Assembly: GCA_002269645.1 (NCBI GenBank) | Contig: NIVC01002140.1 | Coordinates: 112,400-176,399 of the forward strand | DNA from: Macrostomum lignano | Taxonomy: Eukaryota | Direction: 5' to 3' | Length of the DNA stretch: 64,000 bases | Part shown: piece after piece, positions 1 through 46,805 of the stretch | How positions within the stretch are numbered: the first letter of the stretch is position 1 | How the letters are laid out: each line of letters begins with the position of its first letter | Position numbers and translations under genes: made by a program | The notes under the pieces: model-generated | What the model saw: the letters and a program-made list of their open reading frames with translations, nothing else | The model's database searches: none | Told to the model about the DNA's origin: nothing

Positions 1-694
1 TGGTCTTCGCCGGTGTCTCAGTCGGCAGCAGCGCTCAAGGGAGCCATTCAGAGTCGCGGATCTCCTCAAGCTACACGCCCACCTGGACCAACGTCTGAAG
101 AGTGACATCGCGTTCTGGGCAGCAGTTCTGGCAGCCTGGTGGGGTATGCTGCGAAAAGCGAATGTGACGACGCAATCGGGGCAGCTCGATCTGTGGTGCG
201 ACCTGGCAGCATCGAGCATCGTCTTTTCAGAGTACGACTGTGAGCTCACTGTGCGGCATTCGAAGACCAACCAGTTTGGCGATCGAGTTCAGCGAGTGTT
301 TCTTCCGAAACTGCCTGATGGAAGCTTGGGTGTCCTGTGCCCGTTCCGTGCGCTCGAGCGGCAGCTACGGACAAACCGAATCGGCCAGGCGCCGCGTCCG
401 GTTCACCTGTTCTCCACGTGGTCGTCCGCGGGATGGTTGCCTCTGACGGCTAGCAGGTTTGATAGCCGGCTTCGTTCGCTCTGCACATCGGCGGGTTTGT
501 CGCCACGCGAGTTCACTGGCCACGGGCTGCGGCGGGGCGGCGCTACGGCAGCCATGCAGCTCGGTGTTCCACTGCCGATGATCAAGAAGCTGGGCGACTG
601 GAAGGGCAACTCAGTGTTTCGCTATCTATCTGTTCGGGACTCGGATGCCAGGGCGGCTGTGCATGGCTTGGCTCGTCGGGTTGGCGCGCTCTAA
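1..694 (+). CDS. Tyrosine recombinase, C-terminal catalytic part (left Ngaro copy)
   Basis: Catalytic residues R (MLRKAN), K (HSKTN), HxxR (GHGLRRGGAT), W (GDWK), Y (FRYL); same protein as the 4471-5313 ORF. Confidence 0.93.
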   Translation, partial: GLRRCLSRQQRSREPFRVADLLKLHAHLDQRLKSDIAFWAAVLAAWWGMLRKANVTTQSGQLDLWCDLAASSIVFSEYDCELTVRHSKTNQFGDRVQRVFLPKLPDGSLGVLCPFRALERQLRTNRIGQAPRPVHLFSTWSSAGWLPLTASRFDSRLRSLCTSAGLSPREFTGHGLRRGGATAAMQLGVPLPMIKKLGDWKGNSVFRYLSVRDSDARAAVHGLARRVGAL

Positions 695-1120
695 CTCTCT
701 CTCTCTCTCTCTATGTCGAACTTTCTGGTTTGGGTTGGGCCAGGCTCGAACCTGCGCCTCTCGTGCCAACTGCCTTGACTTCGTCTCACTGGTTTAATGG
801 TCCGACCGGGCGTAGCTTGGTTGGGTGTTAAACCAGTGGGGCGTGGCTCTTGTGCGTTGGTGCGGGGGGGTGGTGGGCCGGGCCTTGGTCACGTGCCCGC
901 GGCCTGGGTGGCGTTTATTTAATACGGTGCGGGCTGTCGCTGACCCGCCTGCAAGCGCGTATTGATTTTTTTTCTCGCTTTTAAGTCTTCAAGGTTTTTA
1001 TTTGGCTTTTAAGTCCGGTAAATTAAAGTTAATAAATACGCTCGAATACTCGTACAATAGGGCCAGGCTCGAACCTGCGCCTCTCGTGCCAACTGCCTTG
1101 ACTTCGTCTCACTGGTTTAA
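1..1120 (+). mobile_element. 3' part of a Ngaro-type YR retrotransposon (left copy, cut by the window start), ending in complete B1-A2-B2 split direct repeats
   Basis: 1-1073 is the reverse complement of 4091-5164 (coordinates sum to about 5165). B1 737-795, A2 798-975, B2 1060-1118; B1 and B2 are identical 59-mers. Confidence 0.93.
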
Positions 1121-1126
1121 AAATAT

Positions 1127-2413
1127 TTAAACTTTACTGGATGAATTGTTGATCATGCTAAGCTTCACCTTCCTCTCAAATGCATAGATAATGTACAGGT
1201 CCACGGGTGTTGCGGTAGTCCTCTCAATGTTAGTCACGATATTCACAGGGCTGTTATCAGTAGGCATTTGTCTGGCAGACACATCAGCGCCAAACATCGG
1301 ATATAGAGTTCCATATTGAAGAGCAGTGATAGCCATTCCATTGTTCTCTTTCACAGCCAAGCCGACCAACTCGCTATAAAATTTGCTAATCTTGTTCTGA
1401 CTGAAATCTCCATTTTGTGGCAGTGCAGGGTAAAGATTATCACTGATTTCATGCTGGATGGACCGCACGTCTCCATGTATGTAGCGTATAATGCTATTTG
1501 GGTTTCTCATGTTAATAATAATATACCTTGGATTGCTGCATGATCCCTCTTTAATGCAGATGTTTGTTCTAGTTTCGTTTCGCTCATCTCGACACATGTA
1601 GGCTGTGTATGCAACATCAATGTCCTTCTCTATTGCCTTAAGATAGTCTGCTTTTAGTGCAGTCTTTGGCTCAATGATTTCCAAATACAACTCGATTCCG
1701 GTTAGCTTCACCTCCATCCTAGTGTGATCCGCCCCAGTCCACAACGCTCTACTGCGATCATCTCTAGTCATCTTAAAAGTGTCGCTAAAGTTACTAGTCA
1801 GTCGATTAAATGTATTACAGAATCCACTCATGAATCTTAGTGGTACAAATACATCAACAGACCGATACAGCGGGTTTTTAGCAGCATCATCAGCACCTTG
1901 TAATGCATAGTTGTATCTCTTCTTCCTCTTTTTATAGCCACTGTCATTGATGTCTCCTTCTTTTTCATCTGCAATAAAACCCGCACCACTTCCCAACTGA
2001 ATAAAATCAGGATTCTCAATCAAACAATGAGCGTCATAGACAATTCCAAAGCTGGCGATTCGCTCCAACTCAGTGCTCCCATTCGATACACTAAACTCCT
2101 TGAACATGTACGCCCAAAAGTTACTGATCAGAGCCACATCCGCATCATGCTTGTCAACGTTAGCACGAGCCGCATCCACACCACCCTTTGTCTTGAATTG
2201 AAATGTCATATGGAAGCCGCTCTTAAGACTGTGCACACTAACCAGAGACGAACATCCATTGTATGTAAATGTCAGTGTTTGACCTGGACCCAAATTAGTT
2301 TCATTCTGGTTCTCGTGACTCGGAACTCTTACCTGAGTCGCTTTGATTGTGCTATCATCACTCAAAATAGGCTTGTTAATTTTGTAGAAAACTGGTGTCA
2401 GTGGGTCGTTCAT
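1127..2413 (-). CDS. Polinton/Maverick-type double jelly-roll major capsid protein (PY/hexon-like), 428 aa, apparently intact
   Basis: Recognised motif series SDDST, VALISNFWAYMF, NDSGYKKR, VFVPLRFMSGF, TRDDRSRAL, NPRYIII, YPALPQNGDF, LYPMFGADVS matches the Polinton MCP pattern; A-tract before the ATG; neighbours are ATPase and minor capsid genes. By-eye recognition, no database search. Confidence 0.8.
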   Translation of the reverse strand: MNDPLTPVFYKINKPILSDDSTIKATQVRVPSHENQNETNLGPGQTLTFTYNGCSSLVSVHSLKSGFHMTFQFKTKGGVDAARANVDKHDADVALISNFWAYMFKEFSVSNGSTELERIASFGIVYDAHCLIENPDFIQLGSGAGFIADEKEGDINDSGYKKRKKRYNYALQGADDAAKNPLYRSVDVFVPLRFMSGFCNTFNRLTSNFSDTFKMTRDDRSRALWTGADHTRMEVKLTGIELYLEIIEPKTALKADYLKAIEKDIDVAYTAYMCRDERNETRTNICIKEGSCSNPRYIIINMRNPNSIIRYIHGDVRSIQHEISDNLYPALPQNGDFSQNKISKFYSELVGLAVKENNGMAITALQYGTLYPMFGADVSARQMPTDNSPVNIVTNIERTTATPVDLYIIYAFERKVKLSMINNSSSKV

Positions 2414-2443
2414 TTTTTAACTAAAAATAAAATAAAATAAGAA

Positions 2444-3298
2444 ATGAAGCGGAAAAGTTCATATCATATCTCTGAACTAGAAAAGCTGGCGCAAGCAGAG
2501 AAACGAGTTACCGGTCTAATCAACAAAGAACAACAATCTTACAATGAATTCGTCCAAGCAGCCACCGAATTTCACAAACCCGGATACACAGAAGCGAAGA
2601 AAAACATCGACACTGTGAAGGAAGCAGTTGATGATATTCAAGAGAGCCAGTTGCAAAACACATTGGGTAAAATCCCATCTTCACCGGGACAACCACAGGC
2701 TCAGCAACCAGGACAACCAGTGCAGATGAATGTGACGGATAACTTTTTTGGCCCCGTAATGGTTGATGGAAAATATATTTTTGGAATTAGCGCCTGGTGA
2801 AAAGAAATTACCAAGGAACCGGTGGATTACAACATTGAAGTGACAAAGGAAAATATTTCAATCAATAAAGGTGCAGAAACTAAAAGAATCCCCTACACTA
2901 AAACTTTACTTGATTACTCGTACATGACTAAAAATCTAGAGAAAACGTCTGAAAAGCAGCTAAAAAATTACAAAGATCTTGTTACCTTTGCTTTAGAGAG
3001 GGACATAGACATTCTCAAGAACAACGGTGTTTTGAAAGTTTTACATGAAAACAGGATTGACTTGAACAGGTTTAGAAAATACAAATACTTTAAACAATGG
3101 TTTGGTTTGCCAGATCAGTTGGAAGTCATAAAATTTCTAGAACAACAACAGCAGCAACCACAACAACAGCAACAACCACAGCAACCACCACCTCCACAGC
3201 AACAAAAAACCCAGGTTGAACAAGTACTTGATCAACTTGACGCCGCAGAACCGATTGTTGTTTCGCAGTACAAAGATACAAACCCTGATACTTGGTAG
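2444..3298 (+). pseudogene. Viral ORF of unknown function (coiled-coil N-terminus, Q/P-rich C-terminus) split by one in-frame TGA at 2798-2800
   Basis: ORFs 2444-2800 and 2822-3298 share a frame (ISAW*KEITKEPVDY); divergent from the MCP gene across a short A/T-rich intergenic. Confidence 0.55.
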
Positions 3299-3581
3299 AC
3301 ATAATAATTGCAATGTTATTTACATTGCCCAAAACTGGTTTGAACTGCCAAATAAAACAATTAGAGGTAACTGTAATTTGATTCTCCTTTTCCCAACCAT
3401 ACCACAGGATCGACTGAAACGATTTTATAATGAGGTCATTGCCCCAGCTCACATTACATATCCAGCTAAGAACTCTAACAGAACAATATCACAGGAGGAA
3501 TTTGTTAACATATGCTATGAAAAGTGGAACCAACCTTATCAGTTTGTCATGATTAATAAGGAGAAAAGAATTTTACTTTAA
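3288..3581 (+). pseudogene. C-terminal fragment of an A32/FtsK-like genome-packaging ATPase
   Basis: LGRHNNCNVIYIAQNWFELPNKTIRGNCNLILLF...WNQPYQFVMI matches the GRH-N / sensor Q / IR-N region of Polinton ATPases; Walker A and B are absent, implying an upstream deletion. Confidence 0.75.
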
Positions 3582-3597
3582 TTTTTTATTTAAAAAA

Positions 3598-4074
3598 ATG
3601 TCAGTAAATTTTGCAGGTGAGTCAACTACAGGCAACAGCACTCTCACAACTTCCTTTCTTGACAAGCGCTACATTAACACTGATGAAGAGATCCCAGAGA
3701 TCAAACTGAATAAAAACAGACTGAAACAATTAGAGCGCTCCATGCACCAGTTGCAAATAAACATGGAAGATCTCAGGCTTAAAGTAGCTAGGCAGAAGTT
3801 TGAAAGTGATAAGCTTTATGTGCCGTTGTTAAACGCAACTAATGAACTTAGGTCAGAAATAACTTCGGCGGTCTCGCTAATCAACGGCTTGAGATCATCA
3901 GTTAATCTTCTGGGAAATTCCACTGATAGACGGATGCGTATTCTTGAAGGAGGAGTTTTCACAAACACAGCTAAAGTGAATAATTTAGAAGAGTTCATGA
4001 ACCAGTCAACAGCATTGCATGATAGAATTAAAGAAAACGTCGCAACCAACACAGTTAAAGTGAGGAATTTGTGA
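3598..4074 (+). CDS. Viral coiled-coil protein of unknown function, probably 3'-truncated at the rearrangement junction
   Basis: 158-aa ORF with TAA-T-tract-A-tract-ATG intergenic; its stop codon comes from the junction sequence at 4072-4074. Confidence 0.5.
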   Translation: MSVNFAGESTTGNSTLTTSFLDKRYINTDEEIPEIKLNKNRLKQLERSMHQLQINMEDLRLKVARQKFESDKLYVPLLNATNELRSEITSAVSLINGLRSSVNLLGNSTDRRMRILEGGVFTNTAKVNNLEEFMNQSTALHDRIKENVATNTVKVRNL

Positions 4075-4470
4075 GTTCGAGCCTGAGTGAGTTCGAGCCT
4101 GGCCCTATTGTACGAGTATTCGAGCGTATTTTATTAACTTTAATTTACCGGACTTAAAAGCCAAATAAAAACCTTGGAGACTTAAAAGCGAGAAAAAAAA
4201 TCAATACGCGCTTGCAGGCGGGTCAGCGACAGCCCGCACCGTATTAAATAAACGCCACCCAGGCCGCGGGCACGTGACCAAGGCCCGGCCCACCACCCCC
4301 CGCACCAACGCACAAGAGCCACGCCCCACTGGTTTAACACCCAACCAAGCTACGCCCGGTCGGACCATTAAACCAGTGAGACGAAGTCAAGGCAGTTGGC
4401 ACGAGAGGCGCAGGTTCGAGCCTGGCCCAACCCAAACCAGAAAGTTCGACATAGAGAGAGAGAGAGAGAG

Positions 4471-5471
4471 TTAGAGCGCGCCAACCCGACGAGCCAAGCC
4501 ATGCACAGCCGCCCTGGCATCCGAGTCCCGAACAGATAGATAGCGAAACACTGAGTTGCCCTTCCAGTCGCCCAGCTTCTTGATCATCGGCAGTGGAACA
4601 CCGAGCTGCATGGCTGCCGTAGCGCCGCCCCGCCGCAGCCCGTGGCCAGTGAACTCGCGTGGCGACAAACCCGCCGATGTGCAGAGCGAACGAAGCCGGC
4701 TATCAAACCTGCTAGCCGTCAGAGGCAACCATCCCGCGGACGACCACGTGGAGAACAGGTGAACCGGACGCGGCGCCTGGCCGATTCGGTTTGTCCGTAG
4801 CTGCCGCTCGAGCGCACGGAACGGGCACAGGACACCCAAGCTTCCATCAGGCAGTTTCGGAAGAAACACTCGCTGAACTCGATCGCCAAACTGGTTGGTC
4901 TTCGAATGCCGCACAGTGAGCTCACAGTCGTACTCTGAAAAGACGATGCTCGATGCTGCCAGGTCGCACCACAGATCGAGCTGCCCCGATTGCGTCGTCA
5001 CATTCGCTTTTCGCAGCATACCCCACCAGGCTGCCAGAACTGCTGCCCAGAACGCGATGTCACTCTTCAGACGTTGGTCCAGGTGGGCGTGTAGCTTGAG
5101 GAGATCCGCGACTCTGAATGGCTCCCTTGAGCGCTGCTGCCGACTGAGACACCGGCGAAGACCACGAAGCACCAGCTTAACCATCGGCGACTCGCACGGG
5201 TCCGACCGGCCGAGAGCTCTGAAGTACAGCGAGACCGCGTTAGCATACGCCTGGCAACTCCGAAAGGCTGACAGCCGGGTGGACAGCTCGGCCAGGTATT
5301 CAGCCACGTGCACAGGCTCTGCCCGCAGCGGCGTCAGGTGCCGGGAATTGCAAAATCGCAGCCAAGACGCGAGCTGCGACCGGTAACTCCGCTTCGTGCG
5401 GGGCGCGTAGGCATTGCCCAGGATAAACGCGCAACGCTTGCTGAGGCGGTCGGGAGTCTGGCGCGGAGGGC
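4471..5471 (-). CDS. Tyrosine recombinase with N-terminal SAM-like domain; frame open upstream of the tracked ORF but with no early AUG
   Basis: Manual translation of 5472-5314 continues in frame as ...NAYAPRTKRSYRSQLASWLRFC... into the 280-aa ORF with R-K-HxxR-W-Y; preceded by a polypyrimidine tract and CAG acceptor at 5474-5472. Confidence 0.9.
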
Positions 5472-6149
5472 CTGTAAAATGAGAAAAACGGAGGCAGCAG
5501 GGCAGAAAGCATGGCTAGCGATCTCGTTAAAACAGCAGTCAACAGAGCCATACACCCGAAATAAAAAATCGCGCATTTTGTCCACGGCGTGCAGCCTAGA
5601 GCACGGGTCCGCAAAGACATGGTACCAGCCAGGCACATGAAAAGCGCGCACCTCAACCCCACGCCTAACAGCAATGAGCATGGCAGTCTGGAACAGCGGC
5701 TGCAACTCAGGCTGCCGACAGCAACCTCTGTTAATCATGCCAACAGCCGCACTAGAGTCGGAGTAGACCACGACCGAACTGTCATTTAAAAAGGCACCCC
5801 AGCGAACCATAGCCAGCAGCGGAACAATAGCTTCTTTGTACGTGATATGCTTGTCTTTAAACTTTCCTCCAGCATCCAGATCCCAATTGACGTACAGCCA
5901 ATCCACCATACCGCTACCATTGCGCAAAATGGCTCCGCCACCAGCACTGCTCGCATCGGTTTCGATGATCCAGCCGTTTGTGCAACTTCTCCAAAGCTGA
6001 AAATCAGGCAGCTTCAGAAGGGCACCTCGCCACCAGAGTAAAATACGCACAGTGTCAGCGGACACACGCACTTTGTGATGTGGCTTTTCCAGGGCATTAA
6101 GCAGGTCGAACAGGGGTCTTAGGAAGCAACTCCCAGCGTGCACCACCAA
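5334..6149 (-). pseudogene. DIRS-type RNase H domain of pol, detached from RT by a frameshifting deletion
   Basis: ETDASSAGGG, HITYKE, VYSDSSAA, FADPCSR motifs; different frame from RT at about 6150. Confidence 0.85.
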
Positions 6150-7120
6150 AGCGACGAAAGCTGTCGTTTCGAGAGACGCCTGCGCTGCGAAAAGTTAAGC
6201 AGTGTGGTGCGCATTTCCTCACACTTTTCCGCCGGCACACTAAGAACTCCACGGACAGTATCAATCTTCACACCGAGATACACCAAGCATTGCGTAGGTT
6301 CAACCACTTTGTTCCAATTGACACCAAAACCTAACTGGCGAACCAGCTTAATCAGCTCTTTCAGAGCATCCATACACTCTTTCTCGCTCTCGGCCGCAAC
6401 CAGAAAATCATCCAGGTAAACCGAAATATTGGCCACGCCGCGTCGCACCATCATCCTCTTGACCGCTTGAGTAAGCCGGTAGAAAATCTCGACCGAGGCG
6501 CAGCTACCAAAGGGTAGCCGGGTGTCGACAAGCCATGTCAGATCACGGTTGCCTTTAAAGCGCCAACCAATGCCGGTCGCCTGGTAATCATCCGGATGGA
6601 TCGCCACGCTTCTGTAAGCTTGCGACAAGTCAAGCTTAGCCATGAACCAGCCCTTGCCGATAGAGGCTGCAACCTTCTTGACGGACTCAAACCTGGGGCT
6701 CAGCTTCTTCGTATAGTTGTCATTTACCGAGTAGCCCGGAGGCGTGCTGCAGTCATGAATAAGTCGAACCTTCCCGTTATCCTTGGGAATTGCTCCCAGA
6801 GGGCTGACCATCGTAGGCTTCTTAGGCACAATCAAATACCTGCCATTCTCAATCTCTTCCTTAATTTGCAACTCAACAGCGCGATGAAAAGCAGAAGTAG
6901 ACATGTAATTGGCATTAAAAGTCTCACAAAGCCCTTTGCCATCAGTAATGCGAAAACCATTTGCGATGCCGTCTAGGATAAAATTCCGATCAGGGTCATT
7001 CTCAAGCTCAGAATCCCACGAACAAAAACGCAGGCGACCCCCTGCACTGCCAACGACAGGATTGTTAAAATTTAAAGCAGGCTGAGCATTAGGCAAAATT
7101 TTAGGATTAAAACAGAGCAT
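6119..7120 (-). CDS. DIRS/Ngaro reverse transcriptase
   Basis: KVRLIHDCS, LDLSQAYRSV, RLPFG, YLDDF, YLGVKID motifs. Confidence 0.93.
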   Translation of the reverse strand: MLCFNPKILPNAQPALNFNNPVVGSAGGRLRFCSWDSELENDPDRNFILDGIANGFRITDGKGLCETFNANYMSTSAFHRAVELQIKEEIENGRYLIVPKKPTMVSPLGAIPKDNGKVRLIHDCSTPPGYSVNDNYTKKLSPRFESVKKVAASIGKGWFMAKLDLSQAYRSVAIHPDDYQATGIGWRFKGNRDLTWLVDTRLPFGSCASVEIFYRLTQAVKRMMVRRGVANISVYLDDFLVAAESEKECMDALKELIKLVRQLGFGVNWNKVVEPTQCLVYLGVKIDTVRGVLSVPAEKCEEMRTTLLNFSQRRRLSKRQLSSLWWCTLGVAS

Positions 7121-7128
7121 CGCAGACT

Positions 7129-8247
7129 TCAGTTTTTTGTCGAATGGTTGGCCTCAGGGTGGGCCTCGAAACAGATGCGGCATACGTGCCGGAATTTGCA
7201 GCTCGACCGGAAGCACCCCCGGCGATTAAAGTGCAAGCAGATCTCTTCCCCGTCTGGCGTTCTGAGGCTCTTGGGGTCTATTGGTTTTTGAAAACGCTGC
7301 TGCCGTGGCTGGGGCAATGACTTGCTGACTCCATGGTTTGCTGGAGTTCCAGTTCTGATTAAGTGCTTAGCAACGAGTTGGAAAGACTCCTTGCCCCATC
7401 GCATGCCAGTTTCAGCTTGCCTAGTGCGGTAGTCCTCGTCAAAACGATTCACCTGCGCAAGGCCGAAGCCCGCGTCAAACAGCTCGCCAATCTGTATTGA
7501 GTAGCGTAAGTAATTCATCAAATCAGTCGTGTCGGCAGTTCCATTTCTACTAGTCACCAGGGCACCATCCTTGATCATCTGCATCATCAGCCTGCAATTT
7601 CCTACCAAATACTGCGCTGCCGTGATGCTATCTGGATTAGGTTTTCTGCTCTTGTAAGTGATTCGGCCACCAGAACCATTAGCCAGCACCACTTCCTGCT
7701 CAAAGCCGTCGAGGAAATCACGAATCAGGAGAGCCTTACGTCTACCAGAACACTCCATCCGTTCATTGGCCCTGTTCTGTGACAACAATCTGTCAAGCAG
7801 CTCATTGCCATTATCTGCTTGGTCTAATCCAGCATCATCACACCCATCAGGAAAGTAACTGGGGCCAGCAGGCTTGGCACACTCACCGCGATTCATAGGA
7901 CGCGTGGATGGACACTCGCGCTGCAGATCTCCGATCTCCCTCTTGAGTTGAGCGGCTTCCTTGCGTAGTTGCAACAGTCTGATCTCCTTCTCCGCTTTCG
8001 CGATGTCCTCGTCCAGGCCCGCCGCCGACTCCCGAGCCGCCTCCGTACTGATGTTGTCATCTGCTTCGGCTTCTTGCTTAGATTGCTCCATGTTCTGCAA
8101 CAGCGAATCTGTCCACGACTGGTCTGGGGCTGCGAGCAGGGCGCTGACAAGGTCGGCCTTGTTGCCCCGACTGCTTATGTTAGCGTGGGCACACAAGGCT
8201 TGCAGAGCCACCTTGCTCAGGTGCATAAGTTTGTCGCGGTCAGCCAT
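7129..8247 (-). CDS. Gag-like ORF1 (372 aa) with N-terminal SAP-like domain, coiled coil and C-terminal CCCH-type zinc finger
   Basis: ATG at 8247 (MADRDK); LSKVALQALCAHANISSRGNKADLVSAL fits the SAP pattern; CLHFNRRGCFRSSCKFRHVCRICFEAH. Confidence 0.85.
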   Translation of the reverse strand: MADRDKLMHLSKVALQALCAHANISSRGNKADLVSALLAAPDQSWTDSLLQNMEQSKQEAEADDNISTEAARESAAGLDEDIAKAEKEIRLLQLRKEAAQLKREIGDLQRECPSTRPMNRGECAKPAGPSYFPDGCDDAGLDQADNGNELLDRLLSQNRANERMECSGRRKALLIRDFLDGFEQEVVLANGSGGRITYKSRKPNPDSITAAQYLVGNCRLMMQMIKDGALVTSRNGTADTTDLMNYLRYSIQIGELFDAGFGLAQVNRFDEDYRTRQAETGMRWGKESFQLVAKHLIRTGTPANHGVSKSLPQPRQQRFQKPIDPKSLRTPDGEEICLHFNRRGCFRSSCKFRHVCRICFEAHPEANHSTKN

Positions 8248-8458
8248 TGCAAAAAAATGAGAAAAAAAATCAATACGCGCTTGCAGGCGGGTCAGCGACA
8301 GCCCGCACCGTATTAAATAAACGCCACCCAGGCCGCGGGCACGTGACCAAGGCCCGGCCCACCCCCCCCCCCCGCACCAACGCACAAGAGCCACGCCCCA
8401 CTGGTTTAACACCCAACCAAGCTACGCCCGGTCGGACCATTTTTGTGGGTGAAAAAAA

Positions 8459-9322
8459 ATGGAAGCTATAGCCGAAAGACTAAACAACATTGTTTCACAC
8501 TCCAAGGAGAGCATTCCTATTACAATAACTGGGCGAATTAATGACTCAAACGGGATGTTTGTTGAAAAATTAGAGCAGGCGATTCGCCTGGATCCAGGCG
8601 CTAATTACCATGTCTATCTTAACGACTTCACTGGTTGGTCAAACGTTCCCAATGTGATGGCAGCAAATAATAAGTTTTATTACAAATGGAAAGGTGCAGC
8701 AGCAGACCCTGTGGTATTCCATGTGAGCACGCAAAGTGTGGATACCTACAATAACTTTCTAGAAAATGTCTTTACTAAAAGAGGCCATTTTGAGACACCT
8801 GATGCGAGTAAGCCAGAGAAGAAACTGTTCCCTGCCAAACTAACCTATGATCTCACTGTAATGAGAGTGGTCATGCAAGTTCACAAAGATGCGGAGGTTG
8901 AGTTTAAAGATGACACTTGGTATAGGGAACTTGGATTCGAGAAGAAAGTTTATAAGGCAGAATCCGCGGCGCGGACCGCCACTCAAGCATCGGGGACTGT
9001 TAGAATGGTCCGGGAAAGTGTAAGCGGTTTGTTCTTAGCACCCAATATTGCAGACATTGTAAAGGGTTTGAATATTCTAATCAGAAGCAATCTCAGTCTT
9101 GATTGAGTATTTAAGGGAAAACGAACGAATATTTTGTACAACATCTCCAACTCTGTAGCTGGAGGACAGATGGTGGTAGAGAAACCAAATCCAGTGAAAA
9201 GAGTTGTATTGAGTAATAAGGAGATTCACGAGATTGTGCTACAGTTTGAGACTGAAGATGGGATGGGCGTTGATTTCAACGGTGAAGAGTTTGTACTGAC
9301 GTTGATCATTGAGAGAATGTGA
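8459..9322 (+). pseudogene. Polinton-type minor capsid protein (PX/penton), split by one in-frame TGA at 9104-9106
   Basis: N-terminal AIRLDPGANYHVYLNDFTGWSNVPNV..NNKFYY and C-terminal VVEKPNP...GVDFNGEEFVLTL patterns; the two tracked ORFs are in the same frame (SNLSLD*VFKGKRTNILYNIS). Confidence 0.8.
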
Positions 9323-24450: not shown

Positions 24451-25032
24451 GCTATTGCGACTCAGCTCAGCCCCAGCCCCTCGGTTGCTTTACAAACTGG
24501 TCAGCACAAGAGCTGATTAGATCGCTTCTCTCTTCGTCTGATTTTCTTTGCGTTGTTGCAGCCCACATGACATCACAGAGAGTCTAATCACGAAATAGAG
24601 TAATTAATTTTAGCTCAAAACACTGCAAAGGGTCCTTCTAATGTAGACACACATCTTTATTGAGAAATCGTATTATATCGAGTAACAGTCTTCACTGAAG
24701 CCGAAAATTTAAATTAAATTAGCAAAATATTTGTTACCCGCGTACTATATTCTGTCAGGCCAAAATTCTAATTAAAAAATGGGCTGTCATTAGATCACAG
24801 CTCATGGTACATGTGCGTCGCAAATTGTATTTGCGCAGGTACTCCACGTAATTTAGCCCGTGGGTGAAATTGGCTCAAATTCTATTCAAAAAGCTCGTGT
24901 TTATTAGATTTAATTGGCGCTAAATCGTCAATTTCGCTTTATATCAAGCTAGCTAACATAAATTCTGTAAAATGTTAGTGGCGGAGAGCGTCAAGAAGAT
25001 ACTCAAAAAATTATCCCAAGTACGCTCAATCA

Positions 25033-26700
25033 ATATGGTGTGTTATGGAATCACTCAATATGGAATGTTATGAAATCACTCAATATAGGGTGTTATGAAA
25101 TCACTCAATATAGGGTGTTATGGAATCACTCAATATAGGGTGTTATGGAATCACTCAATATAGGGTGTTATGGAATCACAAAATATGGAATGTTATGAAA
25201 TCACTCAATATGGAATGTTATGGAATCACTTAATATGGGGTGTTATGGAATCACTCAATATGGAATGTTATGGAATCACTTAATATGGGGTGTTATGGAA
25301 TCACTCAATATGGAATGTTATGGAATCACTCAATCTAGGGTGTTATGGAATCACTCAATATAGGGTGTTATGGAATCACTTAATATGGGGTGTTATGGAA
25401 TCACTCAATGTAGGGTGTTATGGAATCACTTAATATGGGGTGTTATGGAATCACTCAATATAGGGTGTTATGGAATCACTTAATATGGGGTGTTATGAAA
25501 TCACACAATATGGAATGTTATGGAATCACTCAATAAGGAATGTTATAGAATCACTTAATATGGGGTGTTATGGAATCACTCAATATGGAATGTTATGGAA
25601 TCACTTAATATGGGGTGTTATGGAATCACTCAATATGGAATGTTATGGAATCACTCAATCTAGGGTGTTATGGAATCACTCAATATAGGGTGTTATGGAA
25701 TCACTTAATATGGGGTGTTATGGAATCACTCAATATAGGGTGTTATGGAATCACTTAATATGGGGTGTTATGGAATCACTCAATATAGGGTGTTATGGAA
25801 TCACTTAATATGGGGTGTTATGAAATCACTCAATATAGGGTGTTATGAAATTACTAAATATAGGGTGTTATGGAATCACACAATATGGAATGTTATGGAA
25901 TCACTCAATATGGAATGTTATGGAATCACTTAATATGGGGTGTTATGGAATCACTCAATATGGAATGTTATGGAATCACTCAATCTAGGGTGTTATGGAA
26001 TCACTCAATATAGGGTGTTATGGATTTACTTAATATGGGGTGTTATAAAATCACTCAATATAGGGTGTTATGAAATCACTCAATATAGGGTGTTATGGAA
26101 TCACTCAATATAGGGTGCTGTGGAATCACACAATATGGGGTGTTATGGAATCACTCAATATAGGGTGTTATGAAATCACTCAATATAGGGTGTTATAGAA
26201 TCACTCAATATAGGGTGTTATGAAATTACTAAATATAGGGCGTTATGGAATCACTCAATATAGGGTGTTATGGAATCACACAATATGGAATGTTATGGAA
26301 TCACTTAATATGGGGTGTTATGGAATCACTCAATATGGAATGTTATGGAATCACTTCATATGGGGTGCTATGGAATCACTCAATATAGGGTGTTATGGAA
26401 TCACTCAATATAGGGTGTTATGGAATCACACAATATGGAATGTTATGGAATCACTTAATATGGGGTGTTATGGAATCACTCAATATAGGGTGTTATGGAA
26501 TCACACAATATGGAATGTTATGGAATCACTTAATATGGGGTGTTATGGAATCACTCAATATGGAATGTTATGGAATCACTTTATATGGGGTGCTATGGAA
26601 TCACTCAATATAGGGTGTTATGGAATCACTCAATATAGGGTGTTATGAAATCACTCAATATGGAATGTTATGAAATCGCTCGATACGGAGTGTTATAGGG
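25033..26700. repeat. 25-bp satellite (TCACTCAATATAGGGTGTTATGGAA)n, about 66 copies
   Basis: Tandem periodicity with GGAAT/AGGGT/GGGGT variants. Confidence 0.97.
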
Positions 26701-38999: not shown

Positions 39000-40290
39000 A
39001 CAGCAAGCATCCCCCCTCCTCCCAGATAGCAAGCACCCCCAGATAGCAAGCACCCCCAGATAGCAGCACCCCCAGATAGCAAGCACCCCAGATAGCAAAC
39101 ATCCCCCAAATAGCAAGCATCCTCCAGATAGCAAGCATCCTCCAGATAGCAAGCATCCCCCAGATAGCAAGCATCCCCCAGATAGCAAGCATCCCCCAGA
39201 TAGCAAACATCCCTCAGATAGCAAGCATCCCCCAAATAGTAAGCATCCTCCAGATAGCAAGCATCCCCCAGATAGCAAGCATCCCCAAGATAGCAAGCCT
39301 CCCTCAGATAGCAAGCATCCCCCAAATAGCAAGCATCCCTCAGATAGCAAGCATCCCCAAATAGCAAGCATCCCTCAGATAGCAAGCATCCCCAAATAGC
39401 AAGCATCCCTCAGATAGCAAGCATCCCCAAATAGCAAGCATCCCCCAGATAGCAAGCATCACCCAGATAGCAAGCATTCCCCAGATAGCAAGCATCCCCC
39501 AAATAGCAAGCATCCTCCAGATAGCAAGCATCACCCAGATAGCAAGCATCCCCCAGATAGCAAGCATCCCCCAGATAGCAAGCATCCCCCAGATAGCAAG
39601 CATCCCCCAAATAGCAAGCATCCTCCAGATAGCAAGCATCACCCAGATAGCAAGCATCCCCCAGATAGCAAGCATCCCCCAGATAGCAAGCATCCCCCAG
39701 ATAGCAAGCATCCCCCAGATAGCAAGCATCCCCCAAATAGCAAGCATTCCCCAGATAGCAAGCATTCCCCAGATAGCAAGCATCCCCCAGATAGCAAACA
39801 TCCCCCAGATAGCAAGCATCCTCCAGATAGCAAGCATCCCCCAGATAGCAAACATCCCCCAGATAGCAAACATCCCTCAGATAGCAAGCATCCCCCAAAT
39901 AGCAAGCATCCTCCAGATAGCAAGCATCCCCCAGATAGCAAGCATCCCCCAGATAGCAAGCATCCCCAAGATAGCAAGCCTCCCTCAGATAGCAAGCATC
40001 CCCAAATAGCAAGCATCCCTCAGATAGCAAGCATCCCCAAATAGCAAGCATCCCCCAAATAGCAAGCATCCTCCAGATTGCAAGCATCGCCCAGATAGCA
40101 AGCATCCCCCAAATAGCAAGCATCCTCCAGATTGCAAGCATCGCCCAGATAGCAAGCATCCCCCAAATAGCAAGCATCCTCCAGATAGCAAGGATCCTCC
40201 AGATAGCAAGGATCCTCCAGATAGCAAGCATTCCCCAGATAACAAGCATCCCCCAGATAGCAAGCATCCCCCAGATAGCAAGCATCCTCC
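39000..40290. repeat. 18-bp satellite (GATAGCAAGCATCCCCCA)n, about 70 copies; short second array at about 42398-42500
   Basis: Tandem periodicity; source of the MLAIWG/DACYLG pseudo-ORFs. Confidence 0.97.
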
Positions 40291-40389
40291 AGACAATAAG
40301 TAGCTAGTGCAACAATTTCCTTAGCTTTATAGTGGCTCCTTTATATTGGCATAGCGCTTTATACCTTTACATTTCAAATAGTATATCTT

Positions 40390-41665
40390 TAATGTTTGAC
40401 ATGGTGGCTCTTCTATGTTGGACATGGTGACTCTTTTATGTTTGACATGGTGGCTCTTTTATGTTAGGCATAGTGGCTCTTTTTGGGTTGACATGGTTTC
40501 TTTTTTATGTTCTACATGGTGGCTCTTTTATATTCTACATGGTGGCTCTTTTATGTTCGACATGGTGGCTCTTCTAGGTTTGAAATGGTGGCTCTTTAAT
40601 ATTTGACAAGGTGGCTCTTTAATGTTTGAAATGCTGGCTCTTTAATGTTTGACATGGTGGCTCTTCTATGTTTGACATGGTGGCTCTTTTTTGTTTGACA
40701 TGGTGGCTCTTGTATGTTCGACATGGTGGCTCTTTTATGTTTGACATGGTGGCTCTTTAATGTTTGAAATGCTGGCTCTTTAATGTTTGACATGGTGGCT
40801 CTTCTATGTTTGACATGGTGGCTCTTTTTTGTTTGACATGGTGGCTGTTGTATGTTCGACATGGTGGCTCTTTTATGTTTGACATGGTGGCTCTTTAATG
40901 TTCTTCACGTTGGCTCTTTAATGTTCTTCATGTTGGCTCTTTTATGTTTGACATGGTGGCTCTTCTATGTTTGACATGGTGGCTCTTTAATATTCTACAT
41001 GGTGGCTCTTTAATATTCTACATGGTGGCTCTTTAATGTTCGACATGGTGGCTCTTTAATGTTTGACATAAGGTCACATATATGTTTGACATGGTGGCTC
41101 CTAAATTTTTGACATGGTGGCTCTTTATGTTTGACATGGTGGCTCTTTATGTTCGACATGATGGCTCTTTAATTTTTGACATGGTGGCTCTTCTATGTTG
41201 GACATGGTGACTCTTTTATGTTTGACATGGTGGCTCTTCCATGTTTGACATGGTGGCTCTTTTATGTTAGGCATAGTGGCTCTTTTCGGGTTGACATGGT
41301 TTCTTTTTTATGTTCTACATGGTGGCTCTTTTATATTCTACATGGTGGCTCTTTTATGTTCGACATGGTGGCTCTTCTAGGTTTGAAATGGTGGCTCTTT
41401 AATATTTGACATGGTGGCTCTTAATTGTTTGACATGGTGGCTCTTTAATGTTCAAAATGGTGGCTCTTAAATGTTCGAAATGGTGGCTCTTTAATGTTCG
41501 AAATGTTGGCTCTTTTATGTTTGACATGGTGGCTCTTATATGTTTGACATGGTGGCTCTTTTATGTTTGACATGGTGGCTCTTTAATGTTCGACATGGTG
41601 GCTCTTCTATGTTTGACATGGTAACTCTTTTATGTTCGTTATTTTGGCTCTTCTATGTTTGACAT
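40390..41665. repeat. 23-bp satellite (GACATGGTGGCTCTTTAATGTTN)n, first array
   Basis: About 55 tandem copies. Confidence 0.96.
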
Positions 41666-42604
41666 TGCGCTTCTTTGATGTTTAGCAGTTTTGTTGTGTT
41701 TTTAAGGTGTTTTGATAAAAAAATCTTTTTGCACTACTAAGATTCGAACCCAGGTCACTACATTAGCAGTCCAGTCTGTTCGCATCAGGGCTATCTCTCT
41801 TCAATTGGAAAACATGAATTGTGGCCTTTATAATTCAATCCTTACAGCAAGTCAATTGGAGTAAAAAGTTATGACATAATCAATTTCTCAGTCAGCCAGT
41901 ATCAGTCTCAATTTAAGTTAGCAATATGGTTACGCAATTTCAATCAAGTCGTGTGTGCATTTCTTCGGCACTGTTTTCAACTTGTTGTGATGCAATCTTT
42001 ATCACAATCGGAATTCAGCCAGTCAGTTTTTTCTCTAGCATTCTTACAATGCATTTCAAGTCGAAAAGTTTGCTTGACCTTTGCAAAAAAAGCATGTTTT
42101 TCGAATATTTAATCCCTTTAACATTGAGCAATTTCTTAGCCAAGATGCATGTACCGTCCCAGGAAAATTTCTGATCGAATGGTGCAAGTTTGAAGAAAAT
42201 CGGTTAAGCCATTTTTTCTGAAATCAATCGCATACCCATATACAGACAACTCACTAGCAATCTTCGCCCCCGTTGGGGGACATCTGGATAGAATCTCTGT
42301 TCTCTACAAGTAACAAAAAGATAGCCAAAAAAGCCTTCACAAAGACGACAGACAAACTGCTCAAATAAAGTGTAATGCAAAAAGAAATCATCCCAAGACA
42401 GCAAGCATCCCCCAAATAGCAAGCATCCCCAAGATTGCAAGCATCCCCCAGATAGCAAGCATCCCCCAGATAGCAAGCATCCCCAAATAGTAAGCATCCA
42501 CCATACAATAAGTACCCGGTAGCTAGTGCTACAATTTCCTTAGCTCTATAGTGGCTCCTTTAAAATTGGCATGACGCTTACTTTTACGTTTGAAATTGTG
42601 TAAA

Positions 42605-45600
42605 TTTTATGTTTGACATGGTGGCTCCTAAATGTTTGACATGGTGGCTCTTTTTTGTTCGACATGGTGGCTCTTTAATGTTCGACATGGTGGCTCTTTA
42701 ATGTTAGACATGGTGGCTCTTTAATGTTCGACATGGTGGCTCTTTAATGTTAGACATGGTGGCTCTTTAATGTTAGACACGGTGGCTCTTTTATGTTCGA
42801 CATGGTGGCTCTTTAATGTTCGACATGGTGGCTGTTTAATGTTAGACATGATGGCTCTTTAATGTTTGACATTGCGGCTCTTTAATGTTTGACATGGTGG
42901 CTCTTTTATGTTGGACATGGTGGTTCTTTTATGTTCTACATGGTGGCTCTTTTATGCTTGACATGGTGGCTCTTTAATGTTTGACATGAGGGCTCTTTTA
43001 TGTTCGACATGGTGGCTCTTTTATGCTTGACATGGTGGCTCTTTACTGTTTGACATGGAGTCACATATATGTTTGACATGGTGGCTCTTTTATGTTTGAC
43101 AAGGTGGCTCTTTAATGTTTTACGAGGTGGCTCTTTAATGTTCTTCATGGTAGCTCTTTTATGTTAGACATGATGGCTTTTTAATTTTCGACATGGTAGC
43201 ACTTTAATGTTAGACATGGTGGCTCTTAAATGTTTGACGTGGTGGCTCTTTTATGTTCGACATGGTGGCTCTTTAATGTTCGACATGGTGGCTTTTTAAT
43301 TTTAGACATGGTGGCTCTTTAATGTTAGACATGGTGGCTCTTTAATATTCGACATGGTGGCTCTTTAATGTTAGACATGGTGGCTCTTTAATATTCGACA
43401 TGGTGGCTCTATAATGTTAGACATAGTGGCTCTTTAATGTTCGACATGGTGGCTCTATAATGTTAGACATGGTGGCTCTTTAATATTCGACATGGTGGCT
43501 CTTTAATGTTCGACATGGTGGCTTTTTAATGTTAGACATGGTGGCTCTTTAATGTTAGACATGGTGGCTCTTTAATATTCGACATGGTGGCTCTTTAATG
43601 TTAGACATGGTGGCTCTTTAATATTCGACATGGTGGCTCTATAATGTTAGACATAGTGGCTCTTTAATGTTCGACATGGTGGCTCTATAATGTTAGACAT
43701 GGTGGCTCTTTAATATTCGACATGGTGGCTCTTTAATGTTTGACATTGAGGCTCTTTAATGTTTGACATGGTGGCTCTTTTATGTTGGACATGGTGGTTC
43801 TTTTATTTTCGACATGGTGGCTCTTTTATGTTTGACATGGTGGCTCTTTACTGTTTGACCTGGATTCACATATATGTTTGACATGGTGGCTCTTTTATGT
43901 TTGACATGGTGGCTTTTTTATGTTTTACATGGTGGCTCTTTAATGTTAGACATGGTGGCTCTTTAATATTCGACATGGTGGCTCTTTAATGTTAGGCATA
44001 GTGGCTCTTTAATGTTCGACATGGTGGCTCTTTAATGTTAGACATGGTGGCTCTTTAATATTCGACATGGTAGCTCTTTAATATTCGACATGGTGGCTCT
44101 TTAATGTTTGACATTGAGGCTCTTTAATGTTTGACCTGGATTCACATATATGTTTGACATGGTGGCTCTTTTATGTTTGACATGGTGGCTCTTTTATGTT
44201 TGACATGGTGGCTCTTTAATGTTAGACATAGTGGCTCTTTAATGTTCGACATGGTGGCTCTTTAATGTTAGACATGGTGGCTCTTTAATATTCGACATGG
44301 TGGCTCTTTAATATTCGACATGGTGGCTCTTTAATGTTCGACATGGTGGCTCTATAATGTTAGACATGGTGGCTCTTTAATATTCGACATGGTGGCTCTT
44401 TAATGTTTGACATTGAGGCTCTTTAATGTTTGACATGGTGGCTCTTTTATGTTGGACATGGTGGTTCTTTTATGTTCGACATGGTGGCTCTTTTATGTTT
44501 GACATGGTGGCTCTTTACTGTTTGACCTGGATTCACATATATGTTTGACATGGTGGCTCTTTTATGTTTGACATGGTGGCTTTTTTATGTTTTACATGGT
44601 GGCTCTTTAATGTTAGACATGGTGGCTCTTTAATATTCGACATGGTGGCTCTTTAATGTTAGACATAGTGGCTCTTTAATGTTCGACATGGTGGCTCTTT
44701 AATGTTAGACATGGTGGCTCTTTAATATTCGACATGGTAGCTCTTTAATGTTAGACATAGTGGCTCTTTAATGTTCGACATGGTGGCTCTATAATGTTAG
44801 ACATGGTGGCTCTTTAATATTCGACATGGTGGCTCTTTAATGTTTGACATTGAGGCTCTTTAATGTTTGACAAGGTGGCTCTTTTATGTTCGACATGGTG
44901 GCTCTTTTATGCTTGACATGGTGGCTCTTTACTGTTTGACATGGAGTCACATATATGTTTGACATGGTGGCTCTTTTATGTTTGACAAGGTGGCTCTTTA
45001 ATGTTTTACGAGGTGGCTCTTTAATGTTCTTCATGGTAGCTCTTTTATGTTAGACATGATGGCTTTTTAATTTTCGACATGGTAGCACTTTAATGTTAGA
45101 CATGGTGGCTCTTAAATGTTTGACGTGGTGGCTCTTTTATGTTCGACATGGTGGCTCTTTAATGTTCGACATGGTGGCTTTTTAATGTTAGACATGGTGG
45201 CTCTTTAATGTTAGACATGGTGGCTCTTTAATATTCGACATGGTGGCTCTTTAATGTTAGACATGGTGGCTCTTTAATATTCGACATGGTGGCTCTATAA
45301 TGTTAGACATAGTGGCTCTTTAATGTTCGACATGGTGGCTCTATAATGTTAGACATGGTGGCTCTTTAATATTCGACATGGTGGCTCTTTAATGTTTGAC
45401 ATTGAGGCTCTTTAATGTTTGACATGGTGGCTCTTTTATGTTGGACATGGTGGTTCTTTTATGTTCGACATGGTGGCTCTTTTATGTTTGACATGGTGGC
45501 TCTTTACTGTTTGACCTGGATTCACATATATGTTTGACATGGTGGCTCTTTTATGTTTGACATGGTGGCTTTTTTATGTTTTACATGGTGGCTCTTTAAT

Positions 45601-46805
45601 GTTAGACATGGTGGCTCTTTAATATTCGACATGGTGGCTCTTTAATGTTAGGCATAGTGGCTCTTTAATGTTCGACATGGTGGCTCTTTAATGTTAGACA
45701 TGGTGGCTCTTTAATATTCGACATGGTAGCTCTTTAATATTCGACATGGTGGCTCTTTAATGTTTGACATTGAGGCTCTTTAATGTTTGACCTGGATTCA
45801 CATATATGTTTGACATGGTGGCTCTTTTATGTTTGACATGGTGGCTCTTTTATGTTTGACATGGTGGCTCTTTAATGTTAGACATAGTGGCTCTTTAATG
45901 TTCGACATGGTGGCTCTTTAATGTTAGACATGGTGGCTCTTTAATATTCGACATGGTGGCTCTTTAATGTTAGACATAGTGGCTCTTTAATGTTCGACAT
46001 GGTGGCTCTATAATGTTAGACATGGTGGCTCTTTAATATTCGACATGGTGGCTCTTTAATGTTTGACATTGAGGCTCTTTAATGTTTGACATGGTGGCTC
46101 TTTTATGTTGGACATGGTGGTTCTTTTATGTTCGACATGGTGGCTCTTTTATGTTTGACATGGTGGCTCTTTACTGTTTGACCTGGATTCACATATATGT
46201 TTGACATGGTGGCTCTTTTATGTTTGACATGGTGGCTTTTTTATGTTTTACATGGTGGCTCTTTAATGTTAGACATGGTGGCTCTTTAATATTCGACATG
46301 GTGGCTCTTTAATGTTAGACATAGTGGCTCTTTAATGTTCGACATGGTGGCTCTTTAATGTTAGACATGGTGGCTCTTTAATATTCGACATGGTAGCTCT
46401 ATAATGTTAGACATGGTGGCTCTTTAATATTCGACATGGTGGCTCTTTAATGTTTGACATTGAGGCTCTTTAATGTTTGACATGGTGGCTCTTTTATGTT
46501 GGACATGGTGGTTCTTTTATGTTCGACATGGTGGCTCTTTTATGTTTGACATGGTGGCTCTTTACTGTTTGACCTGGATTCACATATATGTTTGACATGG
46601 TGGCTCTTTTATGTTTGACATGGTGGCTTTTTTATGTTTTACATGGTGGCTCTTTAATGTTAGACATGGTGGCTCTTTAATGTTCGACATGGTGGCTCTT
46701 TAATGTTCGACATGGTGGCTCTTTAATGGTCGACATGATGGCTCTTTAATGTTCGACATGGTGGCTCTTTAATGTTTGACATGGTGGCTCTTTAATGTTT
46801 GACAT
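42605..46805. repeat. 23-bp satellite, second array (about 180 copies) with higher-order structure
   Basis: Marker variants recur at exact multiples of 23 bp. Confidence 0.97.

What the first reader, a model, noticed from the sequence alone, without database searches (positions are those of the whole stretch)
1100..8470. Ngaro retrotransposon inserted precisely between the two capsid genes of an animal Polinton-like virus; the empty site can be rebuilt
Seen: the element's internal B/A junction is GGTTT-AA-TGGTCC. The left copy ends GGTTT-AA-aaatattTAA, 6 bp from the MCP stop. The right copy starts cccacaaa-AA-TGGTCC, about 17 bp from the penton ATG. Joining the two flanks through the shared AA gives MCP-TAA-atattttttttgtgggtgaaaaaaa-ATG-penton, a compact intergenic with the same stop/T-tract/A-tract/ATG syntax as ATPase to ORF3598. 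Inferred: one YR-mediated insertion, with no TSD, into an A/T tract that spares both capsid ORFs. Known: Ngaro elements nest in endogenous virophages of the protist Cafeteria. An analogous retrotransposon-in-virus nesting in an animal Maverick could be a hitchhiking system in which the retroelement travels with virions.
Basis: partly seen in the sequence, partly recalled or inferred. Interest (0 to 1): 0.85.

Follow-up and report, generated by a model that had tools for sequence, protein, structure and literature searches.

The report
Retrotransposon nested in a decayed endogenous virus
A tyrosine-recombinase (Ngaro-type) retrotransposon landed in the short spacer between the two capsid genes of a virus-like element fossilised in an animal-like genome, but the locus was later rearranged and the viral genes are decayed, so it is an ordinary nested insertion and not evidence that the retroelement rides in virus particles.

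Summary
The capsid calls hold: a double-jelly-roll major capsid protein (MCP) and a penton-like protein. Six of seven close metagenomic relatives place the penton gene 20-81 nt after the MCP stop. That spacer carries a T-run, T8 in five relatives and T7 in one. The window's two flanks are the two halves of that spacer: T3, a shared TT counted once, then T3. One Ngaro insertion without target duplication is therefore well supported.

The title does not describe the present locus. MCP lies on the minus strand. About 1.7 kb of other viral genes lie between it and the complete Ngaro copy. There are two inverted Ngaro copies that are 99.7% identical, one of them cut by the window edge. The complete copy's 3' end is an illegitimate, microhomology-type junction. 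So the insertion was followed by an inversion or inverted duplication.

The viral fragment is decayed. The penton gene and a neighbouring gene each carry one in-frame stop. The ATPase is reduced to its last third. Another gene is truncated, and a 353-nt extra insertion is present. The Ngaro RT-RH frame has one frameshift. Polymerase, integrase, host identity and any insertion preference could not be tested. Hitchhiking is unsupported here. Nested retrotransposons in virophages and Polinton-like viruses are already published.

The parts
1..1120 (+). Ngaro copy L, cut by the window start. It holds the tyrosine recombinase C-terminal part (to 694), B1 (737-797), A2 (about 796-980), a unique stretch, and a complete B2 (1060-1120) that ends GGTTTAA.
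   Evidence: Phage_integrase E 5.6e-6. It is an inverted repeat of 4091-5164 with 3 differences in 1,074 nt.
1121..1126 (.). MCP-side half of the capsid-gene spacer: 6 nt between the end of Ngaro L and the MCP stop codon.
1127..2413 (-). Major capsid protein gene, 428 aa, open. It is the same length as its best relative.
   Evidence: DJR-like_dom in 8 of 8 members, best E 7e-13; fold hits to DJR capsid proteins, low-confidence model.
2444..3298 (+). Homolog of the 446-aa gene that lies divergent from MCP in the relatives. It is broken: one in-frame stop, and about the last 30% is missing.
3216..3581 (+). Remnant of an A32-type packaging ATPase. Only the last third of the protein is left.
   Evidence: It is 73% identical to the C-terminal 88 residues of the 263-aa protein P0141. 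Pox_A32 is found in all 10 scanned homologs.
3598..4074 (+). Coiled-coil gene. Its N-terminal third resembles the 218-aa gene that follows penton in L001. It is truncated, and its stop codon lies in the junction with Ngaro R.
4060..4105 (.). Illegitimate junction between the viral gene and the 3' end of Ngaro R. GTGAG occurs three times, a 16-nt unit is duplicated in tandem, and only the inner 15 nt or so of B2 remain.
4091..8441 (-). Ngaro copy R. It holds A1 (8253-8441), a gag-like ORF with a SAP domain (7129-8247), the RT-RH frame (5334-7120), the tyrosine recombinase (4471-5313), B1 (4368-4428) and A2 (4184-4369). B2 is nearly all missing.
5334..7120 (-). Ngaro RT-RNase H gene, broken by one frameshift relative to nine relatives in which it is a single reading frame.
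8442..8458 (.). Penton-side half of the capsid-gene spacer: 17 nt between the 5' end of Ngaro R and the penton ATG.
8459..9322 (+). Penton-like minor capsid gene. It is full length against relatives of 273-280 aa but broken by one in-frame stop.
   Evidence: (fold hits to giant-virus minor capsid proteins, mavirus mCP, adomavirus LO5 and adenovirus penton base; low-confidence model).
9328..9680 (.). Extra GC-rich stretch of about 353 nt with a (TTTTGGCC)n array. It is absent from the close relative L007.
9675..9917 (-). Small viral ORF (80 aa), convergent with penton. It is conserved at 94% nucleotide identity in L007.

Best explanation
One Ngaro-type retrotransposon integrated in antisense orientation into the short spacer between the MCP stop and the penton start of an endogenous Polinton-like virus copy. 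Its circular junction (B-AA-A) was exchanged with an AA at the centre of an eight-base A/T run, and no target was duplicated. That step is shown by sequence comparison.

Later a non-recombinase rearrangement turned round the segment that carries the outer end of the Ngaro, MCP and three neighbouring viral genes. It left two inverted near-identical Ngaro stretches and one microhomology junction. The rearrangement was either an inversion with a duplicated breakpoint or an inverted duplication. This step is inferred.

The viral fragment is a decaying fossil, and this Ngaro copy carries a frameshift. The locus is best read as a dead-end nested insertion. The choice of site is most simply explained by the recombinase needing a short AA match in A/T-rich DNA.
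For: Relatives:
- In L001, L002, L003, L004, L008 and L009 the penton homolog starts 20-81 nt after the MCP stop on the same strand.
- That spacer holds T8 in five relatives and T7 in one, followed in three relatives by G (C or A in the others), about 8-10 nt of sequence, an A-rich stretch and then the ATG.
- The window's MCP-side flank ends in T3. The penton-side flank begins T3-G, then an A-run, then ATG. With the TT shared with the Ngaro ends counted once, the run is 8. Eleven of the 12 bases after the stop in L004 are then matched.

Ngaro ends:
- AA lies in the internal B1/A2 junction and at both outer ends.
- A1 and A2 differ only in a G-run.

Rearrangement:
- Copies L and R are inverted, with 3 differences in 1,074 nt. 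Their homology stops 15 nt into B2.
- The junction at 4060-4105 has triple GTGAG and a 16-nt tandem duplication, and it lacks the terminal TGGTTTAA.

Decay.

Mechanism by analogy: DIRS-type integration by recombination at a short identical sequence, without target duplication (PMC3266345).
Against: - The relatives are only 70-76% identical in MCP, and one close relative (L010) has a PLA2-like gene upstream of penton instead of MCP. A distant relative (L005) has another gene order.
- No uninterrupted copy from the same genome could be found.
- The left end of copy L is outside the window, so the kind of rearrangement cannot be told.
- An assembly error cannot be excluded.
- In L001 the homolog of the 3598 gene lies after penton, whereas in the window it lies after the ATPase. 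This suggests gene-order differences or further rearrangement.
- Two Ngaro relatives (L006, L011) show no shared dinucleotide and no A-run target.
Confidence: 0.7

Rival explanations
1. Two independent Ngaro insertions occurred in opposite orientation. One was in the MCP-penton spacer and one was inside the 3598 gene. Homologous recombination between them then inverted the segment in between.
For: Two inverted, nearly identical copies flank the inverted segment. Homologous inversion between inverted repeats is a common event (established knowledge).
Against: The supposed second insertion has no proper end. Most of B2 and the terminal TGGTTTAA are missing, and the junction shows microhomology and a tandem duplication. 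This model therefore needs an extra deletion on top of two insertions and one inversion.
Confidence: 0.12
2. The inverted arrangement is an assembly artefact. The real locus would be a simple MCP-Ngaro-penton insertion, with the Ngaro repeat mis-joined.
For: The copies are 99.7% identical, and two of their three differences are homopolymer lengths, which is typical of read noise.
Against: The window is one gap-free 64-kb stretch that crosses kilobase-long minisatellite arrays, which implies long reads. The novel junction at 4060-4105 must exist in some reads. The arms are separated by a 3-kb non-palindromic spacer. One substitution distinguishes the copies.
Confidence: 0.1
3. The present gene order is ancestral, and the two Ngaro copies are unrelated insertions whose flanks resemble one spacer only by chance.
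For: A distant relative (L005) and one close relative (L010) show that gene order varies in this virus group.
Against: Six close relatives have MCP followed by penton. The window flanks are exactly the two halves of their spacer, and the T count adds to 8.
Confidence: 0.03
4. One reading: a working partnership in which the Ngaro sits harmlessly between capsid genes and spreads inside virions of the host virus.
For: The insertion is intergenic and spares both reading frames. A GC-rich Ngaro in an AT-rich viral element mirrors the Cafeteria case. The shuttle idea has been raised for protist elements.
Against: This is a single insertion, so preference cannot be measured. The site splits a conserved promoter-like T-run upstream of penton. 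The viral copy has stops, a deletion, a truncation and a rearrangement. The Ngaro RT-RH frame is frameshifted. No trace of this Ngaro or a close relative was found in 2.9 million viral contigs.
Confidence: 0.05

Closest known systems
Ngaro retrotransposons inside endogenous mavirus-like virophages (EMALEs) of Cafeteria burkhardae (Hackl et al. 2021, PMC8547959)
   Same: A GC-rich YR retrotransposon with the A1-[ORFs]-B1A2B2 architecture and gag-like, RT-RH and YR genes is nested in an AT-rich endogenous virus of the Polinton/virophage supergroup.
   Different: The host here looks animal, not protist. The element is 4.4 kb, not 6-7 kb. There is one insertion in a decayed and rearranged viral fragment, against about one in four of mostly intact EMALEs. 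No preference could be measured.
Nested retrotransposon-like insertions in Polinton-like viruses of cryptophytes and ochrophytes (PMC12220804)
   Same: GC-rich RT-encoding elements of 4-9.5 kb with direct repeats sit in intergenic spacers or genes of endogenous PLVs. The idea that an intergenic insertion lets the virus act as a shuttle is already voiced there.
   Different: Those hosts are algae, and the elements are mostly not typed as Ngaro. Here the pre-insertion site can be inferred to the base from relatives.
DIRS1-type integration model (PMC3266345)
   Same: A short sequence at the circle junction is identical to the target, the ends repeat it, and there is no target-site duplication.
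   Different: The overlap is 2 nt (AA) here against 3 nt (mostly NTT). The repeats are split direct repeats, not inverted terminal repeats with internal complementary regions.
Polinton/Maverick and adintovirus capsid modules
   Same: The fragment has a double-jelly-roll MCP, a penton-like minor capsid protein and an A32-type packaging ATPase.
   Different: No protein-primed polymerase, rve integrase, protease or terminal inverted repeats were seen in the window. Some relatives carry a parvovirus-type PLA2-like gene. Membership of Polintons in the strict sense is open.

Membership tests
Ngaro (DIRS-order tyrosine-recombinase retrotransposons) | gag-like, RT, RNase H and tyrosine recombinase genes in that order on one strand | tested here: met
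   RVT_1 E 1.3e-17 and Phage_integrase E 1.1e-5. RT_RNaseH is weak at E 0.048 but clear in relatives. The gag-like ORF has a SAP domain.
Ngaro (DIRS-order tyrosine-recombinase retrotransposons) | Split direct repeats A1-[ORFs]-B1A2B2 | tested here: met
   A1 is at 8253-8441, A2 at 4184-4369 and B1 at 4368-4428. Copy L has B1 (737-797) and B2 (1060-1120) at 100% identity. Relatives L006 and L011 have the same layout.
Ngaro (DIRS-order tyrosine-recombinase retrotransposons) | No methyltransferase domain, which separates Ngaro from DIRS1-like and PAT-like elements | tested here: inconclusive
   No Pfam hit other than RNase H lies between RT and YR. Only about 270 codons are available, and relatives' RT-RH proteins are 530-580 aa. 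The DIRS methyltransferase domain may not be covered by Pfam.
Ngaro (DIRS-order tyrosine-recombinase retrotransposons) | RT and YR cluster with named Ngaro reference elements in a phylogeny | not tested
   No named Ngaro reference sequence was available from the tools. The best RT hits (48-50% identity) are unnamed proteins of a hemichordate, an amphioxus and metagenomes.
Ngaro (DIRS-order tyrosine-recombinase retrotransposons) | Integration without target-site duplication | tested here: met
   The flanks add up to the T8 run of the relatives only if the terminal dinucleotide is counted once.
Polinton/Maverick in the strict sense | Double-jelly-roll major capsid protein and penton protein | tested here: met
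   The structure models have low confidence (pLDDT 54 and 57). Sequence profiles found nothing in the PDB.
Polinton/Maverick in the strict sense | A32/FtsK-type packaging ATPase | tested here: met
   Only a remnant is present. Its homologs carry Pox_A32.
Polinton/Maverick in the strict sense | Protein-primed family B DNA polymerase, rve integrase and adenain-like protease | tested here: inconclusive
   None was found among the ORFs scanned or by translated comparison with relatives' contigs. The region left of the window is unseen, and all relatives' contigs are under 4 kb.
Polinton/Maverick in the strict sense | Terminal inverted repeats and a 5-6 bp target duplication | not testable with these tools
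   The ends of the viral element were not identified. The fragment runs at least from 1121 to about 9917.
Virus-targeting Ngaro, as Cafeteria types 1 and 2a | Insertions over-represented in viral elements relative to host DNA | not testable with these tools
   There is one independent insertion in the window. The source genome is not in the collections. Viral contigs gave no hits.

The most novel reading that the evidence does not exclude
This Ngaro lineage may recognise the eight-base A/T run that recurs as a promoter-like motif in front of genes of this virus lineage. That would make it a virus-targeting retrotransposon in an animal, parallel to the EMALE-preferring Ngaros of Cafeteria. It might then be carried between hosts by intact relatives of the virus.
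Probability: 0.08. Interest if true: 0.65.

Novelty: new member of a known kind. Interest (0 to 1): 0.27.

Why it matters
If the site choice were a true preference, this would extend the three-level nesting of host, virus and retroelement, known from protists, to an animal-like genome. As the evidence stands, the locus has two uses. It is a clean worked example of a YR-retrotransposon insertion whose pre-insertion site can be inferred to the base from metagenomic relatives. It also shows how such insertions seed later rearrangement of endogenous viral fossils. In addition, it exposes a conserved T8 promoter-like motif and a gene order (446-aa gene divergent from MCP, then penton) in an undescribed lineage of Polinton-like viruses so far seen only in short metagenome contigs.

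Tried and rejected
- Exact look-ups of window proteins in the big collection found nothing, so the source contig and the DNA left of the window could not be fetched.
- Scans of viral and metagenome contigs with the MCP sequence, the MCP profile and the penton profile found no relative.
- Scans of viral contigs with the Ngaro A start, the B end and the RT found nothing.
- Sequence profiles of MCP and penton found nothing in the PDB.
- PHROGs gave nothing useful.
- The ATPase remnant has no direct Pfam or PDB hit. It was identified only through its homologs.
- Rfam found nothing in the window.
- Sample accessions of the relatives are not in the paper library, so their source organisms are unknown.
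- The Ngaro RT has no relative closer than about 50% identity, so no family census was possible.
- Two more distant Ngaro relatives (L006, L011) were checked for the AA overlap and for an A-run target. Neither shows them.
- A recombinase-mediated inversion between the internal B1/A2 site and a pseudo-site was considered and rejected. It would not duplicate about 1.07 kb of the element.
- A foldback read artefact was considered unlikely because of the 3-kb non-palindromic spacer.
Full report
**What is in the window.**
Direct reading and repeat finding show two copies of one GC-rich element. It is 57-60% GC against 37-42% for the DNA between and beside the copies.
- Copy R lies on the minus strand from 8441 down to 4091. 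It has a 189-nt A1 repeat, a gag-like ORF with a SAP domain, reverse transcriptase (RVT_1, E 1.3e-17), a weak RNase H signal, a tyrosine recombinase (Phage_integrase, E 1.1e-5), then B1 and A2.
- Copy L lies on the plus strand and is cut by the window start. It holds the recombinase C-terminus, B1, A2, a unique stretch and a complete B2 that ends GGTTTAA at 1120.
- This A1-[ORFs]-B1A2B2 layout, with no room for a methyltransferase, is the Ngaro architecture described in PMC8547959 and PMC3266345.
- Two more distant relatives share the layout. One is in the hemichordate Glandiceps talaboti (L011) and one is on a large ENA contig (L006).
- The best RT hits are only 48-50% identical, so the family itself is not in the collections.

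- The internal junction GGTTT-AA-TGGTCC, the end of copy L 6 nt from the MCP stop, and the start of copy R 17 nt from the penton ATG are all as stated.
- MCP (1127-2413) is on the minus strand and points away from penton (8459-9322, plus strand).
- About 1.7 kb of other viral genes (2444-4074) lie between MCP and copy R.
- The title therefore describes an inferred past state and not the present locus.

**The capsid calls.**
- The 428-aa product of 1127-2413 has eight relatives at 44-76% identity.
- All eight family members match Pfam DJR-like_dom, with a best E of 7e-13. The window protein itself scores 6e-5, below the curated cut-off.
- The AlphaFold model is poor (pLDDT 54). Its Foldseek matches in BFVD are nevertheless almost all double-jelly-roll capsid proteins of adintoviruses, giant viruses, virophages and adomaviruses, from E 5e-11.
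- The penton family has 12 relatives of 153-332 aa, full-length ones 273-280 aa. Its model is also poor (pLDDT 57).
- The penton model matches giant-virus minor capsid proteins, the mavirus minor capsid protein, a MELD-virus penton, adomavirus LO5 and adenovirus penton base.
- Sequence profiles found nothing in the PDB.
- I accept both calls with moderate confidence.

**The test of the empty site.**
No uninterrupted copy from the same genome could be reached. Contigs of relatives could be reached.
- In six of seven close relatives (L001-L004, L008, L009) the penton homolog starts 20, 43, 81, 20, 26 and 21 nt after the MCP stop on the same strand. A 446-aa gene lies divergent on the other side of MCP.
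- In all six, the spacer holds a T-run placed about 8-10 nt before an A-rich stretch and the ATG. It is exactly T8 in five and T7 in one.
- In the window, the flank on the MCP side ends with three T. The flank on the penton side begins with three T, then G, a short stretch, an A-run and the ATG.
- The TT at each Ngaro end (AA on the Ngaro strand) is also present in the internal B1/A2 junction.
- Counting that dinucleotide once gives a run of eight. Read in order, the two flanks then match 11 of the 12 bases that follow the stop codon in L004.
- I do not write out the joined sequence (see referred steps).
- The result is what one insertion without target duplication predicts. It fits the DIRS-type model, in which the circle junction recombines with a short identical target sequence.
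- Whether strand exchange took place inside the AA, or the AA belongs to one end of the element only, cannot be told from the sequence.
- Caveats: one close relative (L010) has a PLA2-like gene upstream of penton, and a distant one (L005) has another gene order.

**The rearrangement.**
- Copies L and R are inverted repeats with three differences in 1,074 nt: two homopolymer lengths and one substitution. Their homology stops 15 nt into B2.
- Copy L has the whole B2 and the terminal AA. Copy R lacks them.
- Copy R instead joins the 3598 gene through a zone (4060-4105) with GTGAG three times and a 16-nt tandem duplication.
- That is the signature of microhomology-mediated repair, not of a tyrosine recombinase.
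- The simplest history is one insertion followed by an inversion with a duplicated breakpoint, or by an inverted duplication. Either would turn round the outer end of B2, MCP and the three neighbouring genes.
- Two insertions plus homologous inversion needs more events.
- An assembly error is possible but not favoured. The 64-kb window is gap-free across kilobase-long minisatellite arrays and has a 3-kb non-palindromic spacer between the arms.
- The sequence left of the window would decide between these histories.

**State of the elements (breaks are counted, not placed).**
- MCP is open and full length.
- The homolog of the 446-aa gene has one in-frame stop and lacks about 30% of its C-terminus.
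- The ATPase is reduced to its last third. The match is to residues 175-262 of the 263-aa protein P0141, and all ten scanned homologs carry Pox_A32.
- The 3598 gene is truncated at the junction.
- The penton gene has one in-frame stop.
- An extra stretch of about 353 nt lies after penton. It is absent from the 91-94% identical relative L007.
- The Ngaro RT-RH frame has one frameshift against nine relatives in which it is a single frame.
- No polymerase, integrase or protease was seen.
- L007 is itself split in its penton gene. This suggests that these metagenome contigs are also endogenous copies in host DNA.

**How it most likely works, and the hitchhiking idea.**
- T-run, A-rich stretch, ATG recurs upstream of many genes of the relatives. 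It is probably a promoter element of this virus lineage (inference).
- The Ngaro sits at the centre of the penton gene's copy of this motif. So it spares both reading frames but probably not penton expression.
- The viral part of the window has no other A/T run of 8 apart from the A-run in front of the penton ATG. The whole window has 12 such runs. A need for AA within A/T-rich DNA is enough to explain an intergenic landing.
- With one insertion, decayed viral genes, a frameshifted retroelement and no trace in viral contigs, nothing here supports a working partnership.
- Nested retrotransposons in virophages and PLVs, and the shuttle idea, are already published for protists.
- I found no paper on Ngaro in animal Mavericks. 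One transposable element nested in another is routine in animal genomes (established knowledge).

**Host.**
The rest of the window holds a 1,249-codon ORF with stonustoxin-type MACPF, fibronectin-III and AIG1 GTPase domains, a second septin/AIG1-like GTPase, a WSC-domain ORF and many minisatellites. This looks animal, but the organism was not identified.

**Verdict.**
The insertion-site inference is well supported. The present locus is rearranged and dead, and the hitchhiking reading is unsupported. This is a new member of a known kind, of modest interest.

**Record-keeping.**

Noticed in passing
window 9328-9680: A GC-rich stretch of about 353 nt with a (TTTTGGCC)n array lies between the penton stop and the next viral ORF. 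It is absent from the 91-94% identical metagenome contig L007, so it is a second insertion into the viral fragment. Its kind is unknown.
   Followed up: partly
L001-L004, L008, L009 upstream of gene starts; window 2414-2443 and 3582-3597: A run of 6-8 T followed about 8-12 nt later by an A-rich stretch and the ATG recurs in front of many genes of this virus lineage. It is likely a conserved promoter element.
   Followed up: partly
L010 375-857: One relative carries a 160-aa gene with a parvovirus-type phospholipase A2 domain (PF08398) directly upstream of penton. This is a possible entry function in this virus group.
   Followed up: no
L007 (ENA ERZ27309238, k141_197075): This is a close DNA relative of the window's penton region (91-94% identity) in a metagenome. 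Its penton gene is itself split into two called genes, so it is probably another endogenous copy in host DNA and not a free virus.
   Followed up: partly
L011 10920-10931 and 11600-11609 (Glandiceps talaboti, GCA_964340395.1): The Ngaro relative in a hemichordate ends its B repeat with CTGGATTTAA, close to the CTGGTTTAA of the window's element. This suggests a conserved recombinase-site half. It shows no shared dinucleotide at its 5' flank.
   Followed up: partly
window 52565-56314 (-) and 15196-16899 (-): Two long single-exon ORFs are present. One has stonustoxin-type MACPF, fibronectin-III and AIG1 GTPase domains. The other has a septin/AIG1-like GTPase domain. Both are immune-type host genes of an animal-like genome.
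   Followed up: no
window 42605-46809, 40386-41683, 39021-40293, 25026-26696, 62025-63060: Large minisatellite arrays (units of 18-25 nt, up to 183 copies) fill much of the window. The 'hexapeptide' Pfam hits of ORFs at 38.7-40.3 kb are translations of the 18-nt array and are not genes.
   Followed up: partly
L005 (Logan SRR8670882): A distant relative (MCP 44% identical) has the order penton, a 124-aa gene with a weak adenovirus protein-X match, a 149-aa gene, then MCP. Gene order in the capsid module therefore varies across the group.
   Followed up: no
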